64,000 nt of DNA from Lama guanicoe (Eukaryota): positions 18,409,496 through 18,473,495 of the forward strand of contig MU054925.1 in NCBI GenBank assembly GCA_013239625.1, read 5' to 3'. The notes under the pieces were generated by a model. The model ran no database searches. It was given only the letters and a program-made list of their open reading frames with translations, and was not told the DNA's origin. The position numbers and the translations under genes are program-made. Every line of letters starts with the position of its first letter. Position 1 is the first letter of the stretch. Below, in pieces: positions 1 to 36,900 of this stretch.

Positions 1-2080
1 TTAGAGACAGCAAGGAACTTCTAAAGATAACAAAGGATTGATTAATAAATTTATGAGAATGAATTAATAACATTGATGAGATGGAAAAGTTCCTTGAAAG
101 ACACAAACTACCAAAGTTTACTCAAGAAGCAGATAATAACCTGAGCAGCCATATATCTATAAAAGAAATGGATTATATAGTTAAACGCCTTCCCGCAAAG
201 AAACCTCAAGGCTTAAATGGCTTCACTGGTGAATTCTACCAAACACTTAAGGAAAGAATAATACCAATTACACAAATTCTTCTACACAACTACACAAAAA
301 TACTAAAAAAGAGAGAATATTTTTCAACTCATTCTATTAGGCCAGCCTCACTCTGAAACAAAACCAGCACAAGAAAACTAGTGATCAACAACTTTCATGA
401 ATATAGATACAAAAATCCCAAACAAAATTTTAGCACGTAGAATATAAGAATATACAAAAAAAAAAGGATGATTCATCATGACCAACTGGGGTTTCTCTCA
501 GGAATGCAGGTTGGTTTAACATTTGAAAGTCAATTAATATAATTTATCATTAACAAACTAAAATAGCAAACCAACTCAATAGAGACAGAAAAAGCATTTG
601 CCAAAATCCAACATTCATCCCTGATTAAAAAAAAAAACTCTCAGCAAAGTAGGGATGGAAGGGAACTTCTTCATCTACAGGCATCTCCAAAAACCTACAG
701 CTAATATCATTAATGAAACACTGAGTGCTTCCCCTTTAATATAAAGGGAGAGACTAACGAGGTCCACTCTCATCACTTTTATTTAACATTCTACTGAGGT
801 TCTAGCCTCAGTGCAATAAAGCAAGAAAAAGAAACAACAAGCATCCAGATTGGTAGAGAAAAAGTAAAACTGTCCTTAAACACAGACAATACAATCATCT
901 ATGTAAAAAACCTGACGGAATTTACCCCCAAAAGCTACTAGAACTAATAAATGAGTTTGGCAAAATCTCAGGATACAAGATCAATACAAATATCAATTAT
1001 CTATTTATACACGAGCATTGAACAATTATAAACGGAAAATTTTTTAAATGTCATTCATAATAATATAAAAATATGAAATACTTACGGGTAAATCTGATGA
1101 AAGATGTACAAGAACTGTACACCGGTAACTACAATAGACTGATGAAAGAAATTAAAGATCTAAGTAAATGGAGAGATATACCTTGTTCATATGTAGGAAA
1201 ATGAAGTATTGTTAAGATTTCACTTCTCCCCAAATCGATCTATACACAATTCCAATTAAAAATCATAATAGGCTTTTTTGTAGAATCTGACAAGCTGATT
1301 CTAAGATCTGTATGTAAATCCTAATGATTGAGAACACTCAAAACATTCTGAAAAAGAAGAACAAATGTGGAGAAGTAACATTCCCAGATTTTAAAAGCTT
1401 ATTAAAACGCCACGATAATGAATGCAGTGTGGTATGGGTGTCAAGACAGATACAGATAAACTGACCAGAACAAAGTCCAGAAATAGACACACATATATAT
1501 GAACAACTGATTGTTGACAAAAAATGCAAAGGCAATTAAATGAACAATAACACTTTTTCAACAAAGTGCTGGAACAGCTGGATATTTATATGCAAAAAAA
1601 AAAAGAAGTTCAATCTATACCTCCCATACCTCATATCATTTTCAAGAATTAGCTTAATATAGAGCTTAAAACTAAACAGAAAACTTGAAAATATATAACT
1701 TCTACAAGAAAACATAGAAGAAAATCATTGTGACCCTAGTTTAGGAAAGGACTTCTTAGATAATGACACCAAAATCAGATTCATAAAATAATCCAAATTG
1801 ACAAACTGGATTTGGTGAAAATTAAAATCTTGAGCTTGTCAAAGTACACTATTAAAAGAATAAAAATACAAGCCACAGACCAAGAGAAAATATTCGTGAA
1901 TCATATACCTGAAAAAAGAATTTGACTCTAGAATGTATTTTTATAGATTACAAAATTCAGTAATAAAAAATAAATGATGCAATAAAAAAGGGCAAAAGTT
2001 GAACAGATTTATCAGCATTGAATATAAAGATAAATGGGGGGCAGATAAGCACATGAGAAGATGCTCAACATCATTAGTCA
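1..2080 (+). mobile_element. Old LINE-1 (L1M-type) ORF2 remnant covering the RT and C-terminal regions; frameshifted
   Basis: ORF 81-356 (MEKFLERHKLPKFTQE...GFTGEFYQTLKE) is recognisable L1 ORF2p. Downstream A-rich L1 motifs include gaaaaagcatttgccaaaatccaacat, caggatacaagatcaatacaaa and gatgctcaacatcattagtcatt. Many stops and frameshifts. Confidence 0.92.
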
Positions 2081-4038
2081 TTATTTGCAACCTAGGGGAA
2101 TTCTATTCCCAGCCAAACTATCAATCAAGTATGAAAGTAAAAGCAGTGTATTTTCAAATACATAAAATCTTACTGATATATACACAGCACCTAAAAAGAA
2201 ATGAAAGAACAAAGAAAGAGAAAGAAATAACATGGAAGAGAAAGATGTGGACTCCAGGAAACAAGACATCTGATTTAGGAAGGGCTGGCACGATGTTGAA
2301 GGGAAGTGCCAGGGCAACAGCTATGCAGATTCTTCAACAAACTAAAAAGGATGAAGGTCCTGAAGAGATGTCTCCAAGGACAAAAATATAACAACCAGGT
2401 TGGATGATGATTTTGGCTGGACTGAGTGAAACTGTAGGCACATATCACTTTAAAAGGGGGGAAAGAAATCCCACAATCATTAGCTCTAAGGAAAACAAAA
2501 GAGTTACACAATTTACAAAATGCACGTATAATATAGGATTCAGCTGTGAATTCTCCTGCGCAGTGCAAAACTTTACAATCCCACACCTCACTGATGCCAA
2601 GCAGACTCGAAACGACTTTTATTCATTAAACGAGTTCCACTCCTGTTAGAAAGTGGTGGAAGGGTGGCAGCAGGGGGCTTCTGAGAAATGTAGCTACTTA
2701 ATCAAAATGTCTGTGACACTGGAATCAGACCTTCTTAAAGTCATATGGAAGTTTAAGGAGAAATGTGCCAAAGACATGCCTTTTATGTGACTTGTTTCAC
2801 CATCAAAATCTGTCTGCCATGCCTCTAAGGTAAGACCACATTTTATTTTTGCAGATACTGTCCCAAACAAGGGTAATAATTGAGGCCAGCTAAAGATTTT
2901 CTATCTAAATCAAAGCCCAGCGCAAAGCTTGGGGGCGGCGAGAAGAGGAAGAAGTCATACCTGTGTGGATGCTTACCTGTATAGAGGGTAGGTATTTAAA
3001 AGAGTTAAACTTTCATTTTTCAGTATGAGAAAGTTATTGGAAAACTGATAAAACAGAAAATGAAGTAATAGTAGGTACATTCCTAAAGGTGTGTCTTGTA
3101 GGCTTCAGCTCCGTAGCTCAGAGCATTTTATAAAGATGTATCTCCAAAATCTGTATCTTAGAAATTACAGCCTCTGTAATTCTCTAGAATGGAAAATAAC
3201 AATAATCAACTCACTGTTTGACTTCTGAGGAAACAGAAGAGGAAGGAGGTGGGGAGAGGCTTACAGAAGCAGCATCTTCCATACGTACTATTTATACTAT
3301 GATTCCACACACAGGAAAAGAACATTAAAGGAACCGGTTTGATCCTATCATCCTTGGCACTCTGGTAGCACCCCTGTCCTGCTGGTTACATTCAATCCTT
3401 CAAAAGCAAAATTTAGGATCACAGCATAACTTAACCACTAGAGGGAGTTTAAACAGCTATTAAATACAGTGGAAAAGAGGGGCCACCCAAAAAAAGGCTT
3501 TTTCCTCACTAGAAGACATGGCTGTACCTCTTTGAACAGAACAGATTGGAGAAAAATAAAAAATGAGATTTTTAAGTGGTGACAAGGGTAGAATTTTGTT
3601 TCTTCTGAACGTTGGAAGTGCTCATTTTCAAGCGTTTAAAATACTACCCACAGCATAACCGTTTTTCTCATCTCTCTACCAGGCAATACAACCTCCTCCT
3701 TGGTATTTATCACGGGTAGGTTTCCCCTCAATTATACGTTAGTCAACACAGCCCTATATGTGTATCTATACCACACTATTAGGAATTCAGGCTTTCACGC
3801 CAGACAGACCAGATTTTAACCTTGCTTTGCCACCTTGTGATATGTGACCACAGACTATGTAATTAGCTGCTCTAATTAACATGAGACTCAAAGTGCCTCA
3901 TCTATAAAATGGGCGTACAGGATTCTGTAGAAGTAAATTAGTTAATGTATGGAAAACACCTTGGTACACTACCAGATCCAAAAAAAAAAAAACAAACCTT
4001 TTCCAATGGGTATATAGCTTCTGCATTATAAAGCTGCT
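1885..4038 (+). repeat. Tandem duplication, copy 1 (~2154 bp)
   Basis: Begins agaaaatattcgtgaatcatat and ends cattataaagctgct; repeated immediately at 4039-6181. Confidence 0.97.
3770..3970 (+). mobile_element. MIR SINE relic (duplicated at ~5920-6120)
   Basis: MIR core-like cctcatctataaaatggg and ttaatgtatggaaaacaccttggtaca. Confidence 0.6.
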
Positions 4039-6181
4039 AGAAAATATTTGTGAATCATATATCTGAAAAAAGAATTTGACTCTAGAATGTATTTTTATAG
4101 ATTACAAAATTCAGTAATAAAAAATAAATGATGCAATAAAAAAGGGCAAAAGTTGAACAGATTTATCAGCATTGAAGATAAATGGGGGGCAGATAAGCAC
4201 ATGAGAAGATGCTCAACATCATTAGTCATTATTTGCAACCTAGGGGAATTCTATTCCCAGCCAAACTATCAATCAAGTATGAAAGTAAAAGCAGTGTATT
4301 TTCAAATACATAAAATCTTACTGATATATACACAGCACCTAAAAAGAAATGAAAGAACAAAGAAAGAGAAAGAAATAACATGGAAGAGAAAGATGTGGAC
4401 TCCAGGAAACAAGACATCTGATTTAGGAAGGGCTGGCACGATGTTGAAGGGAAGTGCCAGGGCAACAGCTATGCAGATTCTTCAACAAACTAAAAAGGAT
4501 GAAGGTCCTGAAGAGATGTCTCCAAGGACAAAAATATAACAACCAGGTTGGATGATGATTTTGGCTGGACTGAGTGAAACTGTAGGCACATATCACTTTA
4601 AAAGGGGGGAAAGAAATCCCACAATCATTAGCTCTAAGGAAAACAAAAGAGTTACACAATTTACAAAATGCACGTATAATATAGGATTCAGCTGTGAATT
4701 CTCCTGTGCAGTGCAAAACTTTACAATCCCATACCTCACTGATGCCAAGCAGACTCGAAACGACTTTCATTCATTAAACGAGTTCCACTCCTGTTAGAAA
4801 GTGGTGGAAGGGTGGCAGCAGGGGGCTTCTGAGAAATGTAGCTACTTAATCAAAATGTCTGTGACACTGGAATCAGACCTTCTTAAAGTCATATGGAAGT
4901 TTAAGGAGAAATGTGCCAAAGACATGCCTTTTATGTGACTTGTTTCACCATCAAAATCTGTCTGCCATGCCTCTAAGGTAAGACCACATTTTATTTTTGC
5001 AGATACTGTCCCAAACAAGGGTAATAATTGAGGCCAGCTAAAGATTTTCTATCTAAATCAAAGCCCAGCGCAAAGCTTGGGGGCGGCGAGAAGAGGAAGA
5101 AGTCATACCTGTGTGGATGCTTACCTGTATAGAGGGTAGGTATTTAAAAGAGTTAAACTTTCATTTTTCAGTATGAGAAAGTTATTGGAAAACTGATAAA
5201 ACAGAAAATGAAGTAATAGTAGGTACATTCCTAAAGGTGTGTCTTGTAGGCTTCAGCTCCGTAGCTCAGAGCATTTTATAAAGATGTATCTCCAAAATCT
5301 GTATCTTAGAAATTACAGCCTCTGTAATTCTCTAGAATGGAAAATAACAATAATCAACTCACTGTTTGACTTCTGAGGAAACAGAAGAGGAAGGAGGTGG
5401 GGAGAGGCTTACAGAAGCAGCATCTTCCATACGTACTATTTATACTATGATTCCACACACAGGAAAAGAACATTAAAGGAACCGGTTTGATCCTATCATC
5501 CTTGGCACTCTGGTAGCACCCCTGTCCTGCTGGTTACATTCAATCCTTCAAAAGCAAAATTTAGGATCACAGCATAACTTAACCACTAGAGGGAGTTTAA
5601 ACAGCTATTAAATACAGTGGAAAAGAGGGGCCACCCAAAAAAAGGCTTTTTCCTCACTAGAAGACATGGCTGTACCTTTTTGAACAGAACAGATTAGAGA
5701 AAAATAAAAAATGAGATTTTTAAGTGGTGACAAGAGTAGAATTTTGTTTCTTCTGAACGTTGGAAGTGCTCATTTTCAAGCGTTTAAAATACTACCCACA
5801 GCATAACCGTTTTTCTCATCTCTCTACCAGGCAATACAACCTCCTCCTTGGTATTTATCACGGGTAGGTTTCCCCTCAATTATACGTTAGTCAACACAGC
5901 CCTATATGTGTATCTATACCACACTATTAGGAATTCAGGCTTTCACGCCAGACAGACCAGATTTTAACCTTGCTTTGCCACCTTGTGATATGTGACCACA
6001 GACTATGTAATTAGCTGCTCTAATTAAAATGAGACTCAAAGTGCCTCATCTATAAAATGGGCGTACAGGATTTTGTAGAAGTAAATTAGTTAATGTATGC
6101 AAAACACCTTGGTACACTACCAGATCCAAAAAAAACCAAACCTTTTCCAAGGGTATATAGCTTCTGCATTATAAAGCTGCT
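4039..6181 (+). repeat. Tandem duplication, copy 2 (~2143 bp)
   Basis: About 99% identical to 1885-4038 (about 11 substitutions and 3 small indels by eye). The ORF track shows the duplicated ORFs 1999/4153, 2081/4229 and 2404/4552. Confidence 0.97.
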
Positions 6182-10000: not shown

Positions 10001-11657
10001 CTAGACTTCCAGACTCTATCATTCTTCTTAAACACTACTGCCAAAATACTCTTCCTGAAACACATTAGTAGTTTTTTTAATCATGTCACTTTCCTCCAAA
10101 ACCTTCAAGGGCTCCTTACTGCCTATAGACTAAAATCCAGACTCCTTAGCCTGACAAGGCATTCTGTGATCTTGAGTTCTCCTGGAAATGTCCATCAAAG
10201 TGCCTGCGATGCACATATTAGTCAGACAATAAATAATATTCTATATAAGTCTAAGCAAAACAGTGAGTGTACCTGAGAAAGAATATATTCCTTAATTCTG
10301 GCTTTTCCAAGCCAGGCATTGGGGATATGGTGGGACAAAAAACCAGATATGGTCCCTTGCCTTCATGGAGCTTAGAGATAGTTGAAAGGACAGCATCTTA
10401 AACAGAAATAAAGTAAAATAAATATATTCACTGATAGATTTTAACTGCTAAGAAGGAAACGAATGGACAGTGATACAGAGTAAGCTAGACTGATCAGAGT
10501 AATGGCCCAGAGGGTATGGAGCCTGCAGAGGGGCTGGTCCAGGCACAGGAAACAGCCCGTTCAAAGCCCAGAGAGAATCTGGTGTGCCTCAGGATCAGAA
10601 CAGGGGCCGCCCTTTCAGGCTGACTTAGAAAACTGACAGCCTAGGAGGAAGCCTGCATGGGATTCACCTTCCAAAGTACCAAAGAGATAATGCTGAATTT
10701 CTTTTCCCTAACAGGTATCTTCACTGGGACCACGAATGAAGCAGAGAGCAGGGTATGCTTCAGAGTCGCTGTGCGTCCAGCCCTGGAAATCACACCTAGT
10801 GAAATTGGAATCTCAGCTCTACCACTTATTGGCTCTCAACTCCCTTGACCTCCAAGCCTCTGGTCCCTCAGATATAAAGTGGGTTTAAGATAGGACCAAC
10901 TTTGTCGTTACTGTGAACGTTGAGGGAGATAATGCTGGTAAAGCTCCCCAGAACACTGCCACCCACATCGGCGCTGACCTGAATACTGGAGATCACAAGA
11001 TTGTGATGATGATGATGATGATTGTTGTTATTAGCTTCTGGGCAGAGGCTCGTCTCAGATTCTCCTGTCCCCCCCACCCTCCGAGGCCTCCCGACCTGCC
11101 ATCCCAGGCCACCTCCTCCCGCGCACGGCCACCATGATGACCCCAGGGCGGGCGCCAGGCGCCGCCGCCGGACCCCTGTTACCTGGGGCCAAACGCGACC
11201 TGTCGCCACCTCGCGTCCTGGGCCCTGCCTCCCTCCCGGCCGCCTGCTGGCCCCGCAGCTGCGGCGGCGGCGGCTCCCCCAGCCCAGCCCGGCCCGGGCG
11301 GCGCGGGAGGCCGCGGCGGGGCTGGCGGCGGCAGCGGCGGCGGGGGGCAGAGCCCAGAGGCGCGGCGGCGGCGGCGGCAGCGGAGGAAGAGGAGACGGAG
11401 GAGGATGCACCGGGCTGCGGGCGGCCCGGCCCGCAGTGCCTGAGGCGCAGGGAGTGGCCGTCGCCTCCTGCGCGCACCATTCCTGAGATGGCGGCGCGGC
11501 GGCTGCTCGGGGAGCCGAGGAGGGGTCAGCCGGGAGCAGGCTGAGCCCCGCCGGCCCGGGGGGCTCGCCGGGGACCCGCGCGCTCGGGGGAGCTGTGGCC
11601 CGCTGGCCGGCAGGCCTGCGGAGCGGTGAGGCCGGGGCGGCCCCGGAGCGGAGCGTG

Positions 11658-12168
11658 NNNNNNNNNNNNNNNNNNNNNNNNNNNNNNNNNNNNNNNNNNN
11701 NNNNNNNNNNNNNNNNNNNNNNNNNNNNNNNNNNNNNNNNNNNNNNNNNNNNNNNNNNNNNNNNNNNNNNNNNNNNNNNNNNNNNNNNNNNNTGCTNNNN
11801 NNNNNNNNNNNNNNNNNNNNNNNNNNNNNNNNNNNNNNNNNNNNNNNNNNNNNNNNNNNNNNNNNNNNNNNNNNNNNNNNNNNNNNNNNNNNNNNNNNNN
11901 NNNNNNNNNNNNNNNNNNNNNNNNNNNNNNNNNNNNNNNNNNNNNNNNNNNNNNNNNNNNNNNNNNNNNNNNNNNNNNNNNNNNNNNNNNNNNNNNNNNN
12001 NNNNNNNNNNNNNNNNNNNNNNNNNNNNNNNNNNNNNNNNNNNNNNNNNNNNNNNNNNNNNNNNNNNNNNNNNNNNNNNNNNNNNNNNNNNNNNNNNNNN
12101 NNNNNNNNNNNNNNNNNNNNNNNNNNNNNNNNNNNNNNNNNNNNNNNNNNNNNNNNNNNNNNNNNNNN
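11658..12168. other. Assembly gap (N) over the GPR27 N-terminal half, with a 4-bp island at 11793-11796
   Basis: Run of N in extremely GC-rich DNA. Confidence 0.99.
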
Positions 12169-12694
12169 CGGCGGCGGCGGCGACGACGAGGACGCGCCGT
12201 GCGCCCTGGAGCAGCGGCCCGACGGCGCCCCGGGCGCGCTCGGCTTCCTGCTGCTGCTGGCCGTGGTGGTGGGCGCCACGCACCTCGTCTACCTCCGCCT
12301 GCTCTTCTTCATCCACGACCGCCGCAAGAACGTGGGCATCCGGCCGGGAGGGCCGGGCCGCCGCGCGCGCCGCCTCCTCGTGCNNNNNNNNNNNNNNNNN
12401 NNNNNNNNNNNNNNNNNNNNNNNNNNNNNNNNNNNNNNNNNNNNNNNNNNNNNNNNNNNNNNNNNNNNNNNNNNNNNNNNNNNNNNNNNNNNNNNNNNNN
12501 NNNNNNNNNNNNNNNNNNNNNNNNNNNNNNNNNNNNNNNNNNNNNNNNNNNNNNNNNNNNNNNNNNNNNNNNNNNNNNNNNNNNNNNNNNNNNNNNNNNN
12601 NNNNNNNNNNNTCCGGGCCCAGTTCCCCTGCTGCCAGAGCCCCCAGGCCACCCAGGCCACCCTGCCCTGCGACCTGAAAGGCATCGGTTTATAA
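11684..12694 (+). CDS. GPR27: G protein-coupled receptor 27 (SREB1), single exon; start codon lies in an N gap, so the start coordinate is estimated
   Basis: Visible frame from 12170 reads GGGGDDEDAPCALEQRPDGAPGALGFLLLLAVVVGATHLVYLRLLFFIHDRRK-N-VGIRPGGPGRRARRLLV [228 N] RAQFPCCQSPQATQATLPCDLKGIGL* (TAA 12692-12694), matching GPR27 ECL2/TM5 and the C-terminus. Start estimated from the ~161 aa N-terminal to the visible block. The 4-bp island tgct at 11793-11796 fits the V-L codons of the TM1 GNVL motif. Confidence 0.93.
   Translation, partial: XXXXXXXXXXXXXXXXXXXXXXXXXXXXXXXXXXXXXXXXXXXXXXXXXXXXXXXXXXXXXXXXXXXXXXXXXXXXXXXXXXXXXXXXXXXXXXXXXXXXXXXXXXXXXXXXXXXXXXXXXXXXXXXXXXXXXXXXXXXXXXXXXXXXXXXXXXXXXXXXXXGGGGDDEDAPCALEQRPDGAPGALGFLLLLAVVVGATHLVYLRLLFFIHDRRKNVGIRPGGPGRRARRLLVXXXXXXXXXXXXXXXXXXXXXXXXXXXXXXXXXXXXXXXXXXXXXXXXXXXXXXXXXXXXXXXXXXXXXXXXXXXXXRAQFPCCQSPQATQATLPCDLKGIGL
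12384..12611. other. Assembly gap (228 N) over GPR27 TM6-TM7
   Basis: Run of N; the reading frame is preserved across it. Confidence 0.99.
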
Positions 12695-14304
12695 GGGGCT
12701 TTCCCGCCATGCGCACTTCAACCCGGCCTTTTCCTTTGGTTTGGACGGTGACGTCGTTCCTCCCTCTTCTGCCCCCTTTTTCATTTTCTAAGCTGCCTTC
12801 AAAACGACTCTCAAAGTGGATAAACACTTGGATTGTACAGACTTCTGCGTGGGGAGAGGGTTTCGAAGTTCCAGCCCCACCCCAGCTCCGCGTGTTCATC
12901 CTCTTTAATGTATTTTCATCTTGACAGTAGGCCCTGCAGTCTCTGTACTGGTACTGATGTCTTACTCCATGTGTTACTCCTATGGTTTGTTTGTTTTGTT
13001 TTGTTTTGTTTTGTTTTTAAATGAAGGCTAAACATTTTCTTCATGCAACCTTTCCTAAAGACCATGGCCAGTTTTCTACAGAAGCTATTTTTGACAACCT
13101 CAAGTGGCATTACATTTTGCGGTGAAGTAGAGGAACCCGGGGGGACTTCACAAGTTCGATTTCTTGAGGGTCTTCTGTTGGAAGCAGGAGAAAGAGGGAA
13201 AGTTGTCTCAAGTTCCCTCTGAAATGCGGGCCGTGCGGTCAGTGGGACTGCTCTCGTTCTTTGAAGGTATTGAGAACTCTGTTCAGTATTGATATTGAGT
13301 TTAAAGAGCAGAAATGGGAGTGAGTAGCAAGGCAGTCACTTCTGATCAGGGACAAGTAAGATTTGTTCCCCACCTTGCTTTATACCACTAGAAAATGCTC
13401 TTTGTACTTTACCAATCTTGAGTGGAAACATTTCTGTAAAATTGCAACTTTTCAAAAGAGTAAAGAGTGTTTTGGTTAGTAATGGTGTGGAGAAAATACA
13501 GTATTGCATGTTTTCGTGAGTACTGATTGTGGTTCAGGGACTGGGAGGGCTCTGAGACGAGCAAATCAAAAGTGTTTGGGTATTTTTTGCCAATAAAAGT
13601 TAAAATAATTTTATGGAAACAGTTTGTGCTTCAAGGAGCCCAGTTTTATTGTCTTACGAAACTCATTTCCACTTTGAAAATTGTTCTTCTTTTGTTCAAG
13701 GTATAGATGGACGGACTATAATGGTACTTGACTACTTTGAGACAAAACATTTCCTTAAAATGTTTGCTAGGTTGAGCTGTGCTGTTCTGCTGGTGGTTGT
13801 TTTAAATTAATAATGAGAACTGTAATTTAAAATAATTATTTCTTTGTTAGACACATTGTCATTAAATTCAAAGACTAAATTCTGCAAGTACTGTATAATT
13901 TTTTTTTTGCTTCTAATGCTACATTTTTTATTAACGTAGCTTCCGTTTTGAGGATTTATATCTGTATTTCTTTTTGCATTATATAAAATACCAGTATTTT
14001 CATTCTGGAGTGGGTTTCTGTTGCTGTGGTTTGAGGCTATGACAGGTAGTAATATATGTGTAAGCAAGGTAGTCATGTTCTGTTACCCTTTCAGTGCATG
14101 CTGTTTAGTTGACCATCAGAATTTCTAAGACATTTGAGGCTTGTTAATCTAAAGTGCAAGATAAAAATCTGCAAATCTTTTTAAAGGGAAGAAGTGGTAG
14201 ATATATATACTGCTTTAAAACTGTTTTTTTATGAACATAGAAAACATGAGTGTGAGCAAAGTAATCATTTTGATAAAATAATCATTAAAAATGGGTGCAA
14301 TAAA
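12695..14304 (+). other. GPR27: Probable GPR27 3' UTR with candidate poly(A) signals (AATAAA 13592-13597 and 14299-14304; variant TATAAA ~13982)
   Basis: AT-rich sequence with no obvious interspersed repeats after the stop codon. The 3' end cannot be determined from sequence alone. Confidence 0.45.
12987..13017 (+). repeat. (TTTTG)n microsatellite
   Basis: tttgtttgttttgttttgttttgttttgttttt. Confidence 0.9.
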
Positions 14305-20900: not shown

Positions 20901-21292
20901 AGGAGCAGAGAGAGGAGAGAGGATGGAGGAGGGAGGAAAAAGAGAGAGAATGTGAGAATGAATGAATGAATTGTGGAAGACAACTGGAGGCTACCAATCA
21001 TGCCTTCCATTCAGGGATTTTCTTCTTCCTCAACGAATCCAGGAAAATTAACAGAGAACATTAACATGAGCTGTCCAAAGGACTAATGATTGCAGACAAC
21101 ATTTAACTCCCCAGAACTCAATCCCATAGCTAGCAATATTTTTCTGTAAGCCTCTTACTTTAAGCAGCAAATATTTTCTTTTAAAATTTTATATGAGTAA
21201 ATATTGATTCCTATGTGCACATCCTGCGCCTGAAAAATCCTGCTCCTCCACTTCAAACTCCAACTTGGGATTTCAAAAATATATCCCAAGGT

Positions 21293-22305
21293 GCAAATGA
21301 TGCGACTGGCAAGGGATTAATTTTCAAAATATACAAACAGCTCATACACCTTAGTTAAAAAAAAAAAGGNNNNNNNNNNNNNNNNNNNNNNNNNNNNNNN
21401 NNNNNNNNNNNNNNNNNNNNNNNNNNNNNNNNNNNNNNNNNNNNNNNNNNNNNNNNNNNNNNNNNNNNNNNNNNNNNNNNNNNNNNNNNNNNNNNNNNNN
21501 NNNNNNNNNNNNNNNNNNNNNNNNNNNNNNNNNNNNNNAAGTCCATGAATGATAAATGCTCGAGAGGGTGNNNNNNNNNNNNNNNNNNNNNNNNNNNNNN
21601 NNNNNNNNNNNNNNNNNNNNNNNNNNNNNNNNNNNNNNNNNNNNNNNNNNNNNNNNNNNNNNNNNNNNNNNNNNNNNNNNNNNNNNNNNNNNNNNNNNNN
21701 NNNNNNNNNNNNNNNAAACCTCTAATTCGAAAAGACACACACACCCCAATGTTCACAGCAGCACTATTTACAACAGTCAAGGCATGGAAACAACTTAATG
21801 TCCATCAACAGATGACTGGAGAAAGAAGTTGTGATACACACACACACACACACACTATTCAGCTATACAAAAAAAAGAACGAAGTAATGCCATTCATAAC
21901 AACATGGATGGATCTAGAGATTATCATACTAAGTGAAGTAAGTCAGACAGAGAAAGACAAATACCATATGATATCACTTATATGTGGAATCTTAAAAATA
22001 TGATACAAATGCACTTATTTACAAAACAGAAAGAGAGTCACAGACATAGAAAACAAACTTCCTGTTTCCAAAGGGGAAGGGGGAAGGGGATAAATTAGGA
22101 GTTTGGGATTAACAGATACAAACTATTATATATAAAACAGATAAACAACAAGGTCCTAACATATAGCACAGGGAACTACATTCAATATCTTTTAATAACC
22201 TATAATGAAAAAGAATACATCCATGTATAACTGAATCACTATGCTGTACACCAGAAATTAACCCAACATTGCAAATCAACTAAACTTCAATTTAAAAAAA
22301 AAAAA
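21293..22305 (+). mobile_element. Lineage-specific L1 3' portion (ORF2 C-terminus, 3' UTR, poly(A)); two internal N gaps (21370-21538, 21571-21715)
   Basis: TPMFTAALFT...WMDLEIIILSEVSQTEKDKYHMISLICGI is the L1 ORF2p C-terminus, followed by a cetartiodactyl/camelid-type 3' UTR and an A tail. Confidence 0.93.
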
Positions 22306-32894: not shown

Positions 32895-33020
32895 TTTACG
32901 AGTCAGCGGATGGCAGGTGTCTCCCACTTTGCCCATTGGTGTGCAAATCCGTATGCTCTTAACCCAGATACTAACAGCACAGCACATGCCTCCACCACAC
33001 TGGGGGTCCTTGTCGCAGGC
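32895..33020 (-). CDS. PROK2: Prokineticin-2 exon 2
   Basis: gcatttcag|[42 protein letters not shown]|gttagt; 126 nt, cysteine-rich AVIT-family core. Confidence 0.97.
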
Positions 33021-36149: not shown

Positions 36150-36900
36150 GTGAGACAGCGGTCACTTCTCCTCCTGGGCGCGCCCGAAGTCCCCGCCGCC
36201 CGCTGCTTTGCGAGCAGGGCATTCTCCAAGTGCGCCAGGGGGCGACCGGGGCAGGCGTTCCGCCCAGGACGACCCTCCCGGTGTCCCCCGCCTCCCCGTC
36301 GCGGTCCCCCTCCAGAGCGCCCACGGCGCGTGGCAGGCGCGCATCCCCGGCGTACAGGTGCGCCCGGGGCCGCTTACCCCCGTGATGACGGCGGCGTCCC
36401 CGGCGGGGGGCGTGAGTAGCAGCGGCGGCAGCAGAAGCAGGAGCAGCAACCGGGCGCAGCGCGGGCTCCTCATGGTGCCCTCGGGCCTGGGTGGCGGTTG
36501 GGGGGCCGTTAGGGGCGCGCGGGCTGGAGCGCGGAGCGCCGAGCGGCGGGCGGGCGGCTGGCGCGAGCCTGCCGGCGGTTATAAAGGCGAGCCCCGCCGT
36601 GACTCACGCCGCCGCCCGGCCGGCCGCACGCGCGGGGGCCACGGCGCGGAAGCCCCCCGCCCCGCGCTCCGCTCCCCGCGGGCCCCTCGCCTCCCGCCCG
36701 CCGCCGCCTTCCGCACGCGCCCGCATCGCTTTTGTGATCCGAAACACCCTCCTTTGCTGTCCTGGTTTCCCGAGCTCCACGTGCTCAGCGCCCCAAACTT
36801 GCAGCTCATTTGCTCTCCAGATGTTTCAGGAGCGCCTACTACGTGCAAGGCGCGCGGGGTGGGGTGGGGGGGGCTGGCTCACCGGGGCGGGGGAGTAAGG
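36150..36900. promoter_or_regulatory. PROK2: PROK2 CpG island and promoter: TATA-like TTTATAA (36579-36585, minus), AP-1 TGACTCA (36600-36606), E-box CACGTG (36778-36783), HRE-like TACGTG (36840-36845), GC boxes
   Basis: Motifs read directly from the sequence; the TATA-like element is ~105 nt upstream of the ATG. PROK2 is an established E-box (CLOCK/BMAL1) regulated gene. Confidence 0.8.
36378..36473 (-). CDS. PROK2: Prokineticin-2 exon 1 (signal peptide plus the AVITG mature N-terminus)
   Basis: ggcaccATG start; [32 protein letters not shown]|gtaagc; 96 nt. Confidence 0.97.

What the first reader, a model, noticed from the sequence alone, without database searches (positions are those of the whole stretch)
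12320..12345. GPR27 appears to lack ~41 aa of the conserved SREB third intracellular loop (in-frame ~123-bp deletion)
Seen: an ungapped stretch reads ...FFIHDRRK-N-VGIRPGGPGRRARRLLV (cgc aag aac gtg ggc). Known (recalled human GPR27): HDRRK is followed by MRPARLVPAVSHDWTFHGPGATGQAAANWTAGFGRGPTPPAL before VGIRP. Its WTFHGPGATGQAAANW block is a signature shared by the SREB receptors (GPR27, GPR85, GPR173). Here 42 residues are replaced by one Asn and the frame stays intact. Inference: either a lineage- or individual-specific receptor with a shortened ICL3, which would probably alter G-protein or arrestin coupling in a family known for extreme conservation, or a mis-join in a GC-rich, poorly covered block between two N gaps. 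An artifact is at least as likely.
Basis: partly seen in the sequence, partly recalled or inferred. Interest (0 to 1): 0.75.

Follow-up and report, generated by a model that had tools for sequence, protein, structure and literature searches.

The report
Short-looped GPR27 receptor gene, unverified
In this camelid assembly the brain receptor gene GPR27 lacks about 40 codons of its usually unchanging inner loop, but I could not check whether the animal's DNA really lacks them or the assembly dropped them.

Summary
An unbroken reading frame runs from the fifth membrane helix through K-N-V into the last part of the third intracellular loop.

The gene sits at the ordinary GPR27 locus. It is a single exon in a CpG island, with both PROK2 exons about 20 kb downstream on the other strand. 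This matches the mouse locus (PMC7101378 passages).

An in-frame stop lies just before the first N run, so the coding sequence can hold at most 344 codons. The receptor studied in bioRxiv 2025.03.12.642381 ends at L375. At least 31 residues are therefore missing.

The window has only five N runs, three on this coding sequence and two inside an L1-like repeat. Their lengths are odd, and the one run that can be tested keeps the frame. They look like deliberate masks, not assembly gaps.

The decisive test could not be run.

My odds are a real germline deletion about 0.5 (fixed about 0.3, private about 0.2) and an assembly artefact about 0.45.

The parts
11658..12694 (+). GPR27 (SREB1)-type single coding exon. 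The start codon is hidden in the mask and the stop is TAA at 12692-12694.
   Evidence: Searches show the frame. One search shows an in-frame TGA at 11627-11629 with no ATG before the mask. One search gives at most 344-345 codons.
12236..12313 (+). Hydrophobic run read as transmembrane helix 5, ending just before the basic HDRRK stretch.
   Evidence: Translation. Assigning it to helix 5 is my reading and was not tested with a family model.
12326..12334 (+). The junction codons AAG AAC GTG (K-N-V).
   Evidence: The exact breakpoint rests on recalled human sequence.
12335..12383 (+). Distal part of the third intracellular loop that is still present, up to the mask.
12614..12694 (+). C-terminal tail of 26 residues plus the stop. 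Its last 17 residues run from a Pro to a final Leu.
   Evidence: This matches the P359-L375 description in bioRxiv 10.1101/2025.03.12.642381.
11658..12168 (.). N runs 11658-11792 and 11797-12168, with a 4-base island between them, covering the 5' two thirds of the coding sequence.
   Evidence: Read as purposeful masks.
12384..12611 (.). N run of 228 bases covering helices 6 and 7. The frame is kept: 12383-12613 is 77 codons.
11000..11657 (.). CpG-island-like 5' flank with GC of 0.65-0.85.
36378..36473 (-). PROK2 exon 1: ATG, signal peptide, ...AVITG, then a GTAAGC donor. Intact. It sits in a 67-71% GC region and serves as a local control.
32895..33020 (-). PROK2 exon 2, the cysteine-rich core.
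   Evidence: Pfam Prokineticin, E 6.9e-20, 71.6 bits against a cut-off of 21.6.

Best explanation
This is the orthologous GPR27 (SREB1) gene of a llama/alpaca-type camelid, at its normal place beside PROK2. In this assembly it lacks about 123 nt that elsewhere encode the core of the long third intracellular loop. I judge it slightly more likely than not that the DNA of the sequenced animal really carries this in-frame deletion. I put a deletion fixed in the lineage at about 0.3 and a young private or polymorphic allele at about 0.2.

Shown: the letters, the open frame, the locus, and a coding sequence of at most 344 codons.

Inferred: the remaining loop of roughly 30-35 residues is long enough to join helices 5 and 6, so the receptor should still fold and reach the membrane. 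It would lose the loop module that is conserved across all three SREBs. In loop-swap experiments that module carries GPR27's G-protein-independent inhibitory signalling, and it is the proposed docking site for shared partners. The expected result is a receptor with lost or altered signalling rather than a dead gene.
For: The frame is intact across the junction and on to the normal stop. An artefact would be in frame only one time in three.

No true gap is evident in 64 kb. All five N runs look like masks.

The assembly runs without a break through a flank of 80-85% GC.

No frameshift appears in the visible 71 codons, and the frame is kept across the 228-base mask.

The nearby GC-rich PROK2 exon 1 reads cleanly.

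For function: the long third loop is about 60% identical among the three SREBs of human, mouse and zebrafish (PMC10670248 passages). Replacing GPR27's third loop greatly reduced its inhibitory effects while surface localisation stayed similar (bioRxiv 10.1101/2025.03.12.642381 passages).

Gpr27 knockout mice are viable with mild phenotypes, so an altered receptor is tolerable (PMC7101378 abstract and passages).
Against: The missing block is the most conserved part of a 'super-conserved' family. That makes a real loss unlikely beforehand, especially as the rest of the coding sequence is similar enough to human to have been masked.

The region is 70-85% GC, where assemblies fail most often.

Other first-reader notes on this same genome report mid-size deletions and frameshifts in GC-rich exons, some in genes I would expect to be indispensable: s1-858087, s1-858905, s1-861962, s1-859710, s1-860429. 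A follow-up found a stop codon here that the alpaca reference protein lacks (s1-861122). All of these are unchecked AI notes.

A 2.1-kb tandem duplication of 98-100% identity in this window could be a false duplication.
Confidence: 0.5

Rival explanations
1. Assembly or consensus artefact. The animal's gene is full length, and about 123 nt of a very GC-rich stretch were dropped during library amplification, assembly, gap filling or polishing. The deletion happens to be in frame.
For: GC is 0.70-0.85 over the gene and its 5' flank. The lost block is extremely conserved, so a real loss is unlikely beforehand. Several other unverified notes on this genome report deletions or frameshifts in GC-rich exons, and one reports a private stop absent from the alpaca reference. 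A near-identical 2.1-kb tandem duplication in the same window may be an assembly error.
Against: The deletion is in frame. There is no visible gap, frameshift or other damage in the coding sequence. PROK2 exon 1 is clean. From general knowledge, assemblers make breaks and small indels more often than clean 100-bp deletions.
Confidence: 0.45
2. The deletion is real and old, fixed in llamas and alpacas or in all camelids. The rest of the receptor is kept by selection. This is the sub-case of the best explanation that would matter most.
For: The same evidence as for the best explanation. In addition, the remaining coding sequence shows no decay, as expected if a shortened receptor is still in use.
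Against: Nothing was seen from any other camelid. A search for GPR27 together with 'camel' found 2 papers, on a snailfish genome and on human ovary proteins. I saw only the listing, and neither title is about this.
Confidence: 0.3
3. This is not the true GPR27 gene but a retrocopy or extra copy that has lost part of the loop.
For: GPR27 has a single coding exon, so a retrocopy cannot be told apart by missing introns.
Against: It lies in a CpG island with both PROK2 exons about 20 kb downstream on the opposite strand. That matches the described locus, where Prok2 is the nearest gene on one side. The frame is open to the normal stop.
Confidence: 0.03

Closest known systems
Mammalian GPR27 / SREB1 (human, mouse)
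   Same: Single coding exon, CpG-island setting and PROK2 as a neighbour. A 17-residue tail from Pro to a final Leu, like P359-L375.
   Different: The coding sequence has at most 344 codons against 375. The visible third loop jumps from the basic stretch after helix 5 almost straight to its distal part.
GPR85 / SREB2 and GPR173 / SREB3
   Same: They belong to the same family, whose hallmark is a long third loop about 60% identical across the three members and across human, mouse and zebrafish. Breton et al. describe an 'elongated ICL3'.
   Different: That hallmark loop core is what is absent here. No sequence comparison was run.
Engineered GPR27 chimera with the beta1-adrenoceptor third loop (bioRxiv 10.1101/2025.03.12.642381)
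   Same: It is a GPR27 without its own third loop. [quoted passage not shown]
   Different: It is a laboratory swap of the whole loop, not a natural internal deletion. It is a preprint, and I saw only passages of it.

Membership tests
GPR27 / SREB1 orthologue | Single coding exon flanked by PROK2 on one side and EIF4E3 on the other | tested here: met
   PROK2 exons 1 and 2 lie at 36378-36473 and 32895-33020 on the minus strand, with Pfam Prokineticin at E 6.9e-20. The neighbourhood is described in PMC7101378 (passages). EIF4E3 was not seen. Only 11 kb lie upstream in the window, and in mouse the gene is 25 kb away.
GPR27 / SREB1 orthologue | C-terminal domain of 17 residues from a Pro to a final Leu (P359-L375) | tested here: met
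   Tail translation, numbering. Only the spacing and the end residues were compared, not the full sequence.
GPR27 / SREB1 orthologue | Rhodopsin-type seven-helix receptor (family model match) | not tested
The rest of the coding sequence is masked.
SREB family | Long, highly conserved third intracellular loop | tested here: not met
   The visible loop is short. The coding sequence has at most 344 codons against 375. There are 20-41 fewer residues between the helix-5 and tail markers than in zebrafish SREB3A numbering (rough). This may be an assembly error.
SREB family | Altered DRY, CWxP and NPxxY motifs | not testable with these tools
   Helices 3, 6 and 7 lie under the N runs.

The most novel reading that the evidence does not exclude
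Llamas and alpacas, or all camelids, carry a fixed, expressed GPR27 that has lost the signature core of the third intracellular loop shared by all SREB receptors since early vertebrates, while the rest of the receptor stays under constraint. That would be a natural dissection of the one domain thought to carry SREB signalling and partner binding.
Probability: 0.28. Interest if true: 0.55.

Novelty: new variant of a known kind. Interest (0 to 1): 0.3.

Why it matters
SREB receptors are orphan receptors, and no ligand or signalling route is agreed for them. The unusual conservation of their third loop is the main clue to how they work. One preprint finds this loop necessary for GPR27's G-protein-independent effects.

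A healthy mammalian lineage lacking the loop core would have two uses. It would show which functions of the receptor can be dispensed with, and it would provide a natural construct for partner-binding and signalling assays.

If the deletion is an artefact, it is a caution about GC-rich single-exon genes in this assembly.

Tried and rejected

Orthologue comparison: not run. After the visible coding letters could not go to any search tool, and the remaining unmasked coding piece (26 residues) is too short for the search for homologous proteins and its length window.

Solved structures: the 26-residue tail found only a chance match (1 sequence, E 0.68, an endoglucanase). No SREB chain matched this tail.

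Missing segment elsewhere in the window: 7 short patterns taken from the finding's text gave 0 hits in all six frames of the visible sequence. Masked letters cannot be seen.

Retrocopy or paralogue: rejected on synteny.

Literature:
- GPR27 plus 'camel' gave 2 papers, neither relevant by title (listing only).
- GPR27 plus '375 amino' gave 0 papers. The length came instead from the P359-L375 passage.
- The listing shows no paper whose title reports an SREB structure (listing only).
- bioRxiv 10.64898/2026.08.09.743761 passages held nothing on the loop.
- Figure S5 of PMC10670248, an SREB alignment, is a supplement. I could not see it, and it would bear directly on the loop comparison.

L1 identity of the second masked place: this is my reading of the flanks. 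Pfam gave only a sub-threshold unrelated match, RXYLT1_C at 18.4 bits against a cut-off of 27, so no tool confirmed it.

One search failed on a term that was too short and was repeated correctly.

Full report
WHAT IS THERE. One search translates 12170-12382 as 71 codons without a stop. The translation has an acidic, glycine-rich extracellular-loop-like start and then a hydrophobic run that I read as helix 5. Next come a basic stretch ending in K, one Asn codon (AAC, 12329-12331), and V-G-I-R-P with an arginine-rich stretch up to the next N run. One search shows the same frame continuing through that N run to a 26-residue tail and a TAA stop at 12692-12694.

THE N RUNS ARE PROBABLY MASKS, NOT GAPS. 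One search finds only five N runs in 64 kb, 1049 bases in all. Three lie on this coding sequence (135, 372 and 228 bases) and two lie at 21370-21715 (169 and 145 bases). By my reading of the flanks, the latter two sit inside the 3' part of an L1-type repeat. Pfam did not confirm that reading. The lengths are odd, and islands of 4 and 32 bases are left inside the runs. Positions 12383-12613 make exactly 77 codons, so the tail stays in frame. That number also matches what I recall of the human receptor, but this is recalled and comes from no call.

WHICH GENE. I could not run a family model or a homology search on the visible coding letters (see below), so the identity rests on other evidence. 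The gene lies in a CpG-island-like region with GC of 0.65-0.85. About 20 kb downstream, on the opposite strand, are both coding exons of a prokineticin gene. Exon 1 has an ATG, a signal peptide...AVITG and a GTAAGC donor. Exon 2 holds the cysteine-rich core and matches Pfam Prokineticin at E 6.9e-20. Chopra et al. (PMC7101378, abstract and passages) describe Gpr27 as a single coding exon whose nearest neighbours are Prok2 and Eif4e3. The tail also fits: its last 17 residues run from a Pro to a final Leu, as in the 'P359-L375' C-terminal domain of the receptor used in bioRxiv 10.1101/2025.03.12.642381 (passages). I take this to be the orthologous GPR27 locus. A retrocopy is unlikely.

IS THE RECEPTOR REALLY SHORT?

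First, in the receptor's frame there is a TGA at 11627-11629, and the nine codons between it and the mask contain no ATG. The start codon must therefore lie inside the mask, and the coding sequence has at most 344-345 codons. The receptor has 375. At least 31 residues are missing. If exactly 41 were missing, the ATG would sit 33 bases into the mask. One caveat applies: N-termini of SREBs vary, as Breton et al. report for fishes, so part of the shortfall could in principle be N-terminal.

Second, Breton et al. (PMC8187511 passages) describe an 'elongated third intracellular loop'. They give zebrafish SREB3A marker positions 217 (a valine in helix 5), 292 (third loop) and 372 (a cysteine in the C-terminal domain). 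That makes 155 residues from the helix-5 marker to the tail marker. In the window the helix-5 valines and the tail cysteines are 114-135 codons apart (my count), which is 20-41 fewer. The 77 masked codons have to hold helices 6 and 7, so the shortfall must lie in the loop. This check is rough, because it uses a paralogue and assumes which residues correspond.

My own recall agrees with it.

That left no run ids for read laying. This also closed Pfam, solved-structure and homologue searches with the visible receptor sequence, and so any comparison with alpaca, camel, pig or cow gene models. The only other unmasked coding piece, the 26-residue tail, found nothing in the solved-structure sequences (1 chance match, E 0.68). 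It is also too short for the homologue search.

REAL OR ARTEFACT.

For a real deletion:
- The change is in frame, and the frame is open to the normal stop.
- The assembly runs unbroken through 80-85% GC next door.
- There is no frameshift in the visible coding sequence or across the third mask.
- The GC-rich first exon of PROK2 is clean.
- From general knowledge, assemblers more often break or make small indels than remove a clean 123 bases.

For an artefact:
- The gene is 70-85% GC.
- The lost block is the best-conserved part of a family named for its conservation. The third loop is about 60% identical among all three SREBs of human, mouse and zebrafish, and GPR27 is 97% identical between human and mouse (PMC10670248 passages).
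- Earlier notes of this scan say the genome is a llama/alpaca-type camelid (s1-860414, s1-861122).
- Those notes also list several other apparent mid-size deletions or frameshifts in GC-rich exons, and one stop codon absent from the alpaca reference protein. They are unchecked AI notes. I use them only as a hint that this assembly may have local errors.
- A 2.1-kb tandem duplication at 98-100% identity in this very window could be such an error.

The junction codon AAC cannot be interpreted without the undeleted camelid sequence. The motifs of the supposedly missing block occur nowhere else in the visible window (0 hits for 7 patterns), so there is no sign of a local rearrangement.

I put a real deletion at about 0.5 (fixed about 0.3, private or polymorphic about 0.2), an artefact at about 0.45, and anything else at about 0.05.

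HOW IT WOULD WORK IF REAL (inferred). About 30-35 loop residues would remain between helices 5 and 6, enough to connect them, so folding and surface delivery are plausible. The lost part would be the conserved loop module. Kaafarani et al. proposed that the conserved loops dock shared partners, and they found EPB41L2, SLC3A2 and LRBA near all three SREBs (abstract and passages). [quoted passage not shown] Removing the C-terminal domain did not have that effect. A camelid receptor without the loop core would therefore be expected to lose or change this signalling. Gpr27-null mice are viable with mild glucose phenotypes, so such a change could be tolerated.

COMPARISON AND NOVELTY. The gene is a member of a known family at its known locus. 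The one family hallmark I could test, the long conserved loop, is not met in these letters. If the deletion is real, this is a new variant of a known kind. If not, it is not a real feature. I found nothing in print on camelid GPR27. The search returned 2 papers, a snailfish genome and a human ovary proteome, and I saw only the listing.

VERDICT. The cause is undecided. One premise of the artefact reading, the N gaps, is removed. Interest is modest until reads or a second camelid assembly are examined.

Noticed in passing
window 1882-6143: A tandem duplication of a ~2.1-kb unit. About 1882-3995 is repeated at about 4036-6143 with a period of 2148 (2154 over the first ~150 bases, i.e. a 6-base indel). 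Identity is 98-100%. It is either a very young duplication or a false duplication in the assembly.
   Followed up: partly
window 32895-33020 and 36378-36473, minus strand: PROK2 exons 2 and 1, both intact. Exon 1 has an ATG, a leucine-rich signal peptide and ...AVITG followed by a GTAAGC donor. Later exons were not looked for.
   Followed up: partly
window 21280-22000: An L1-type repeat 3' part, by my reading, with two N runs (21370-21538 and 21571-21715) and a 32-base island between them. Pfam gave no supporting match. This is the only masked place outside the receptor gene.
   Followed up: partly
window 11200-11600: A very GC-rich 5' flank (0.80-0.85) with GGC/GCG triplet runs and long open frames on both strands. 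[quoted passage not shown] Whether that holds here was not examined.
   Followed up: no
window 12980-13020: A short (TTTTG)n-like simple repeat in the presumed 3' untranslated region, about 300 bases after the stop codon.
   Followed up: no
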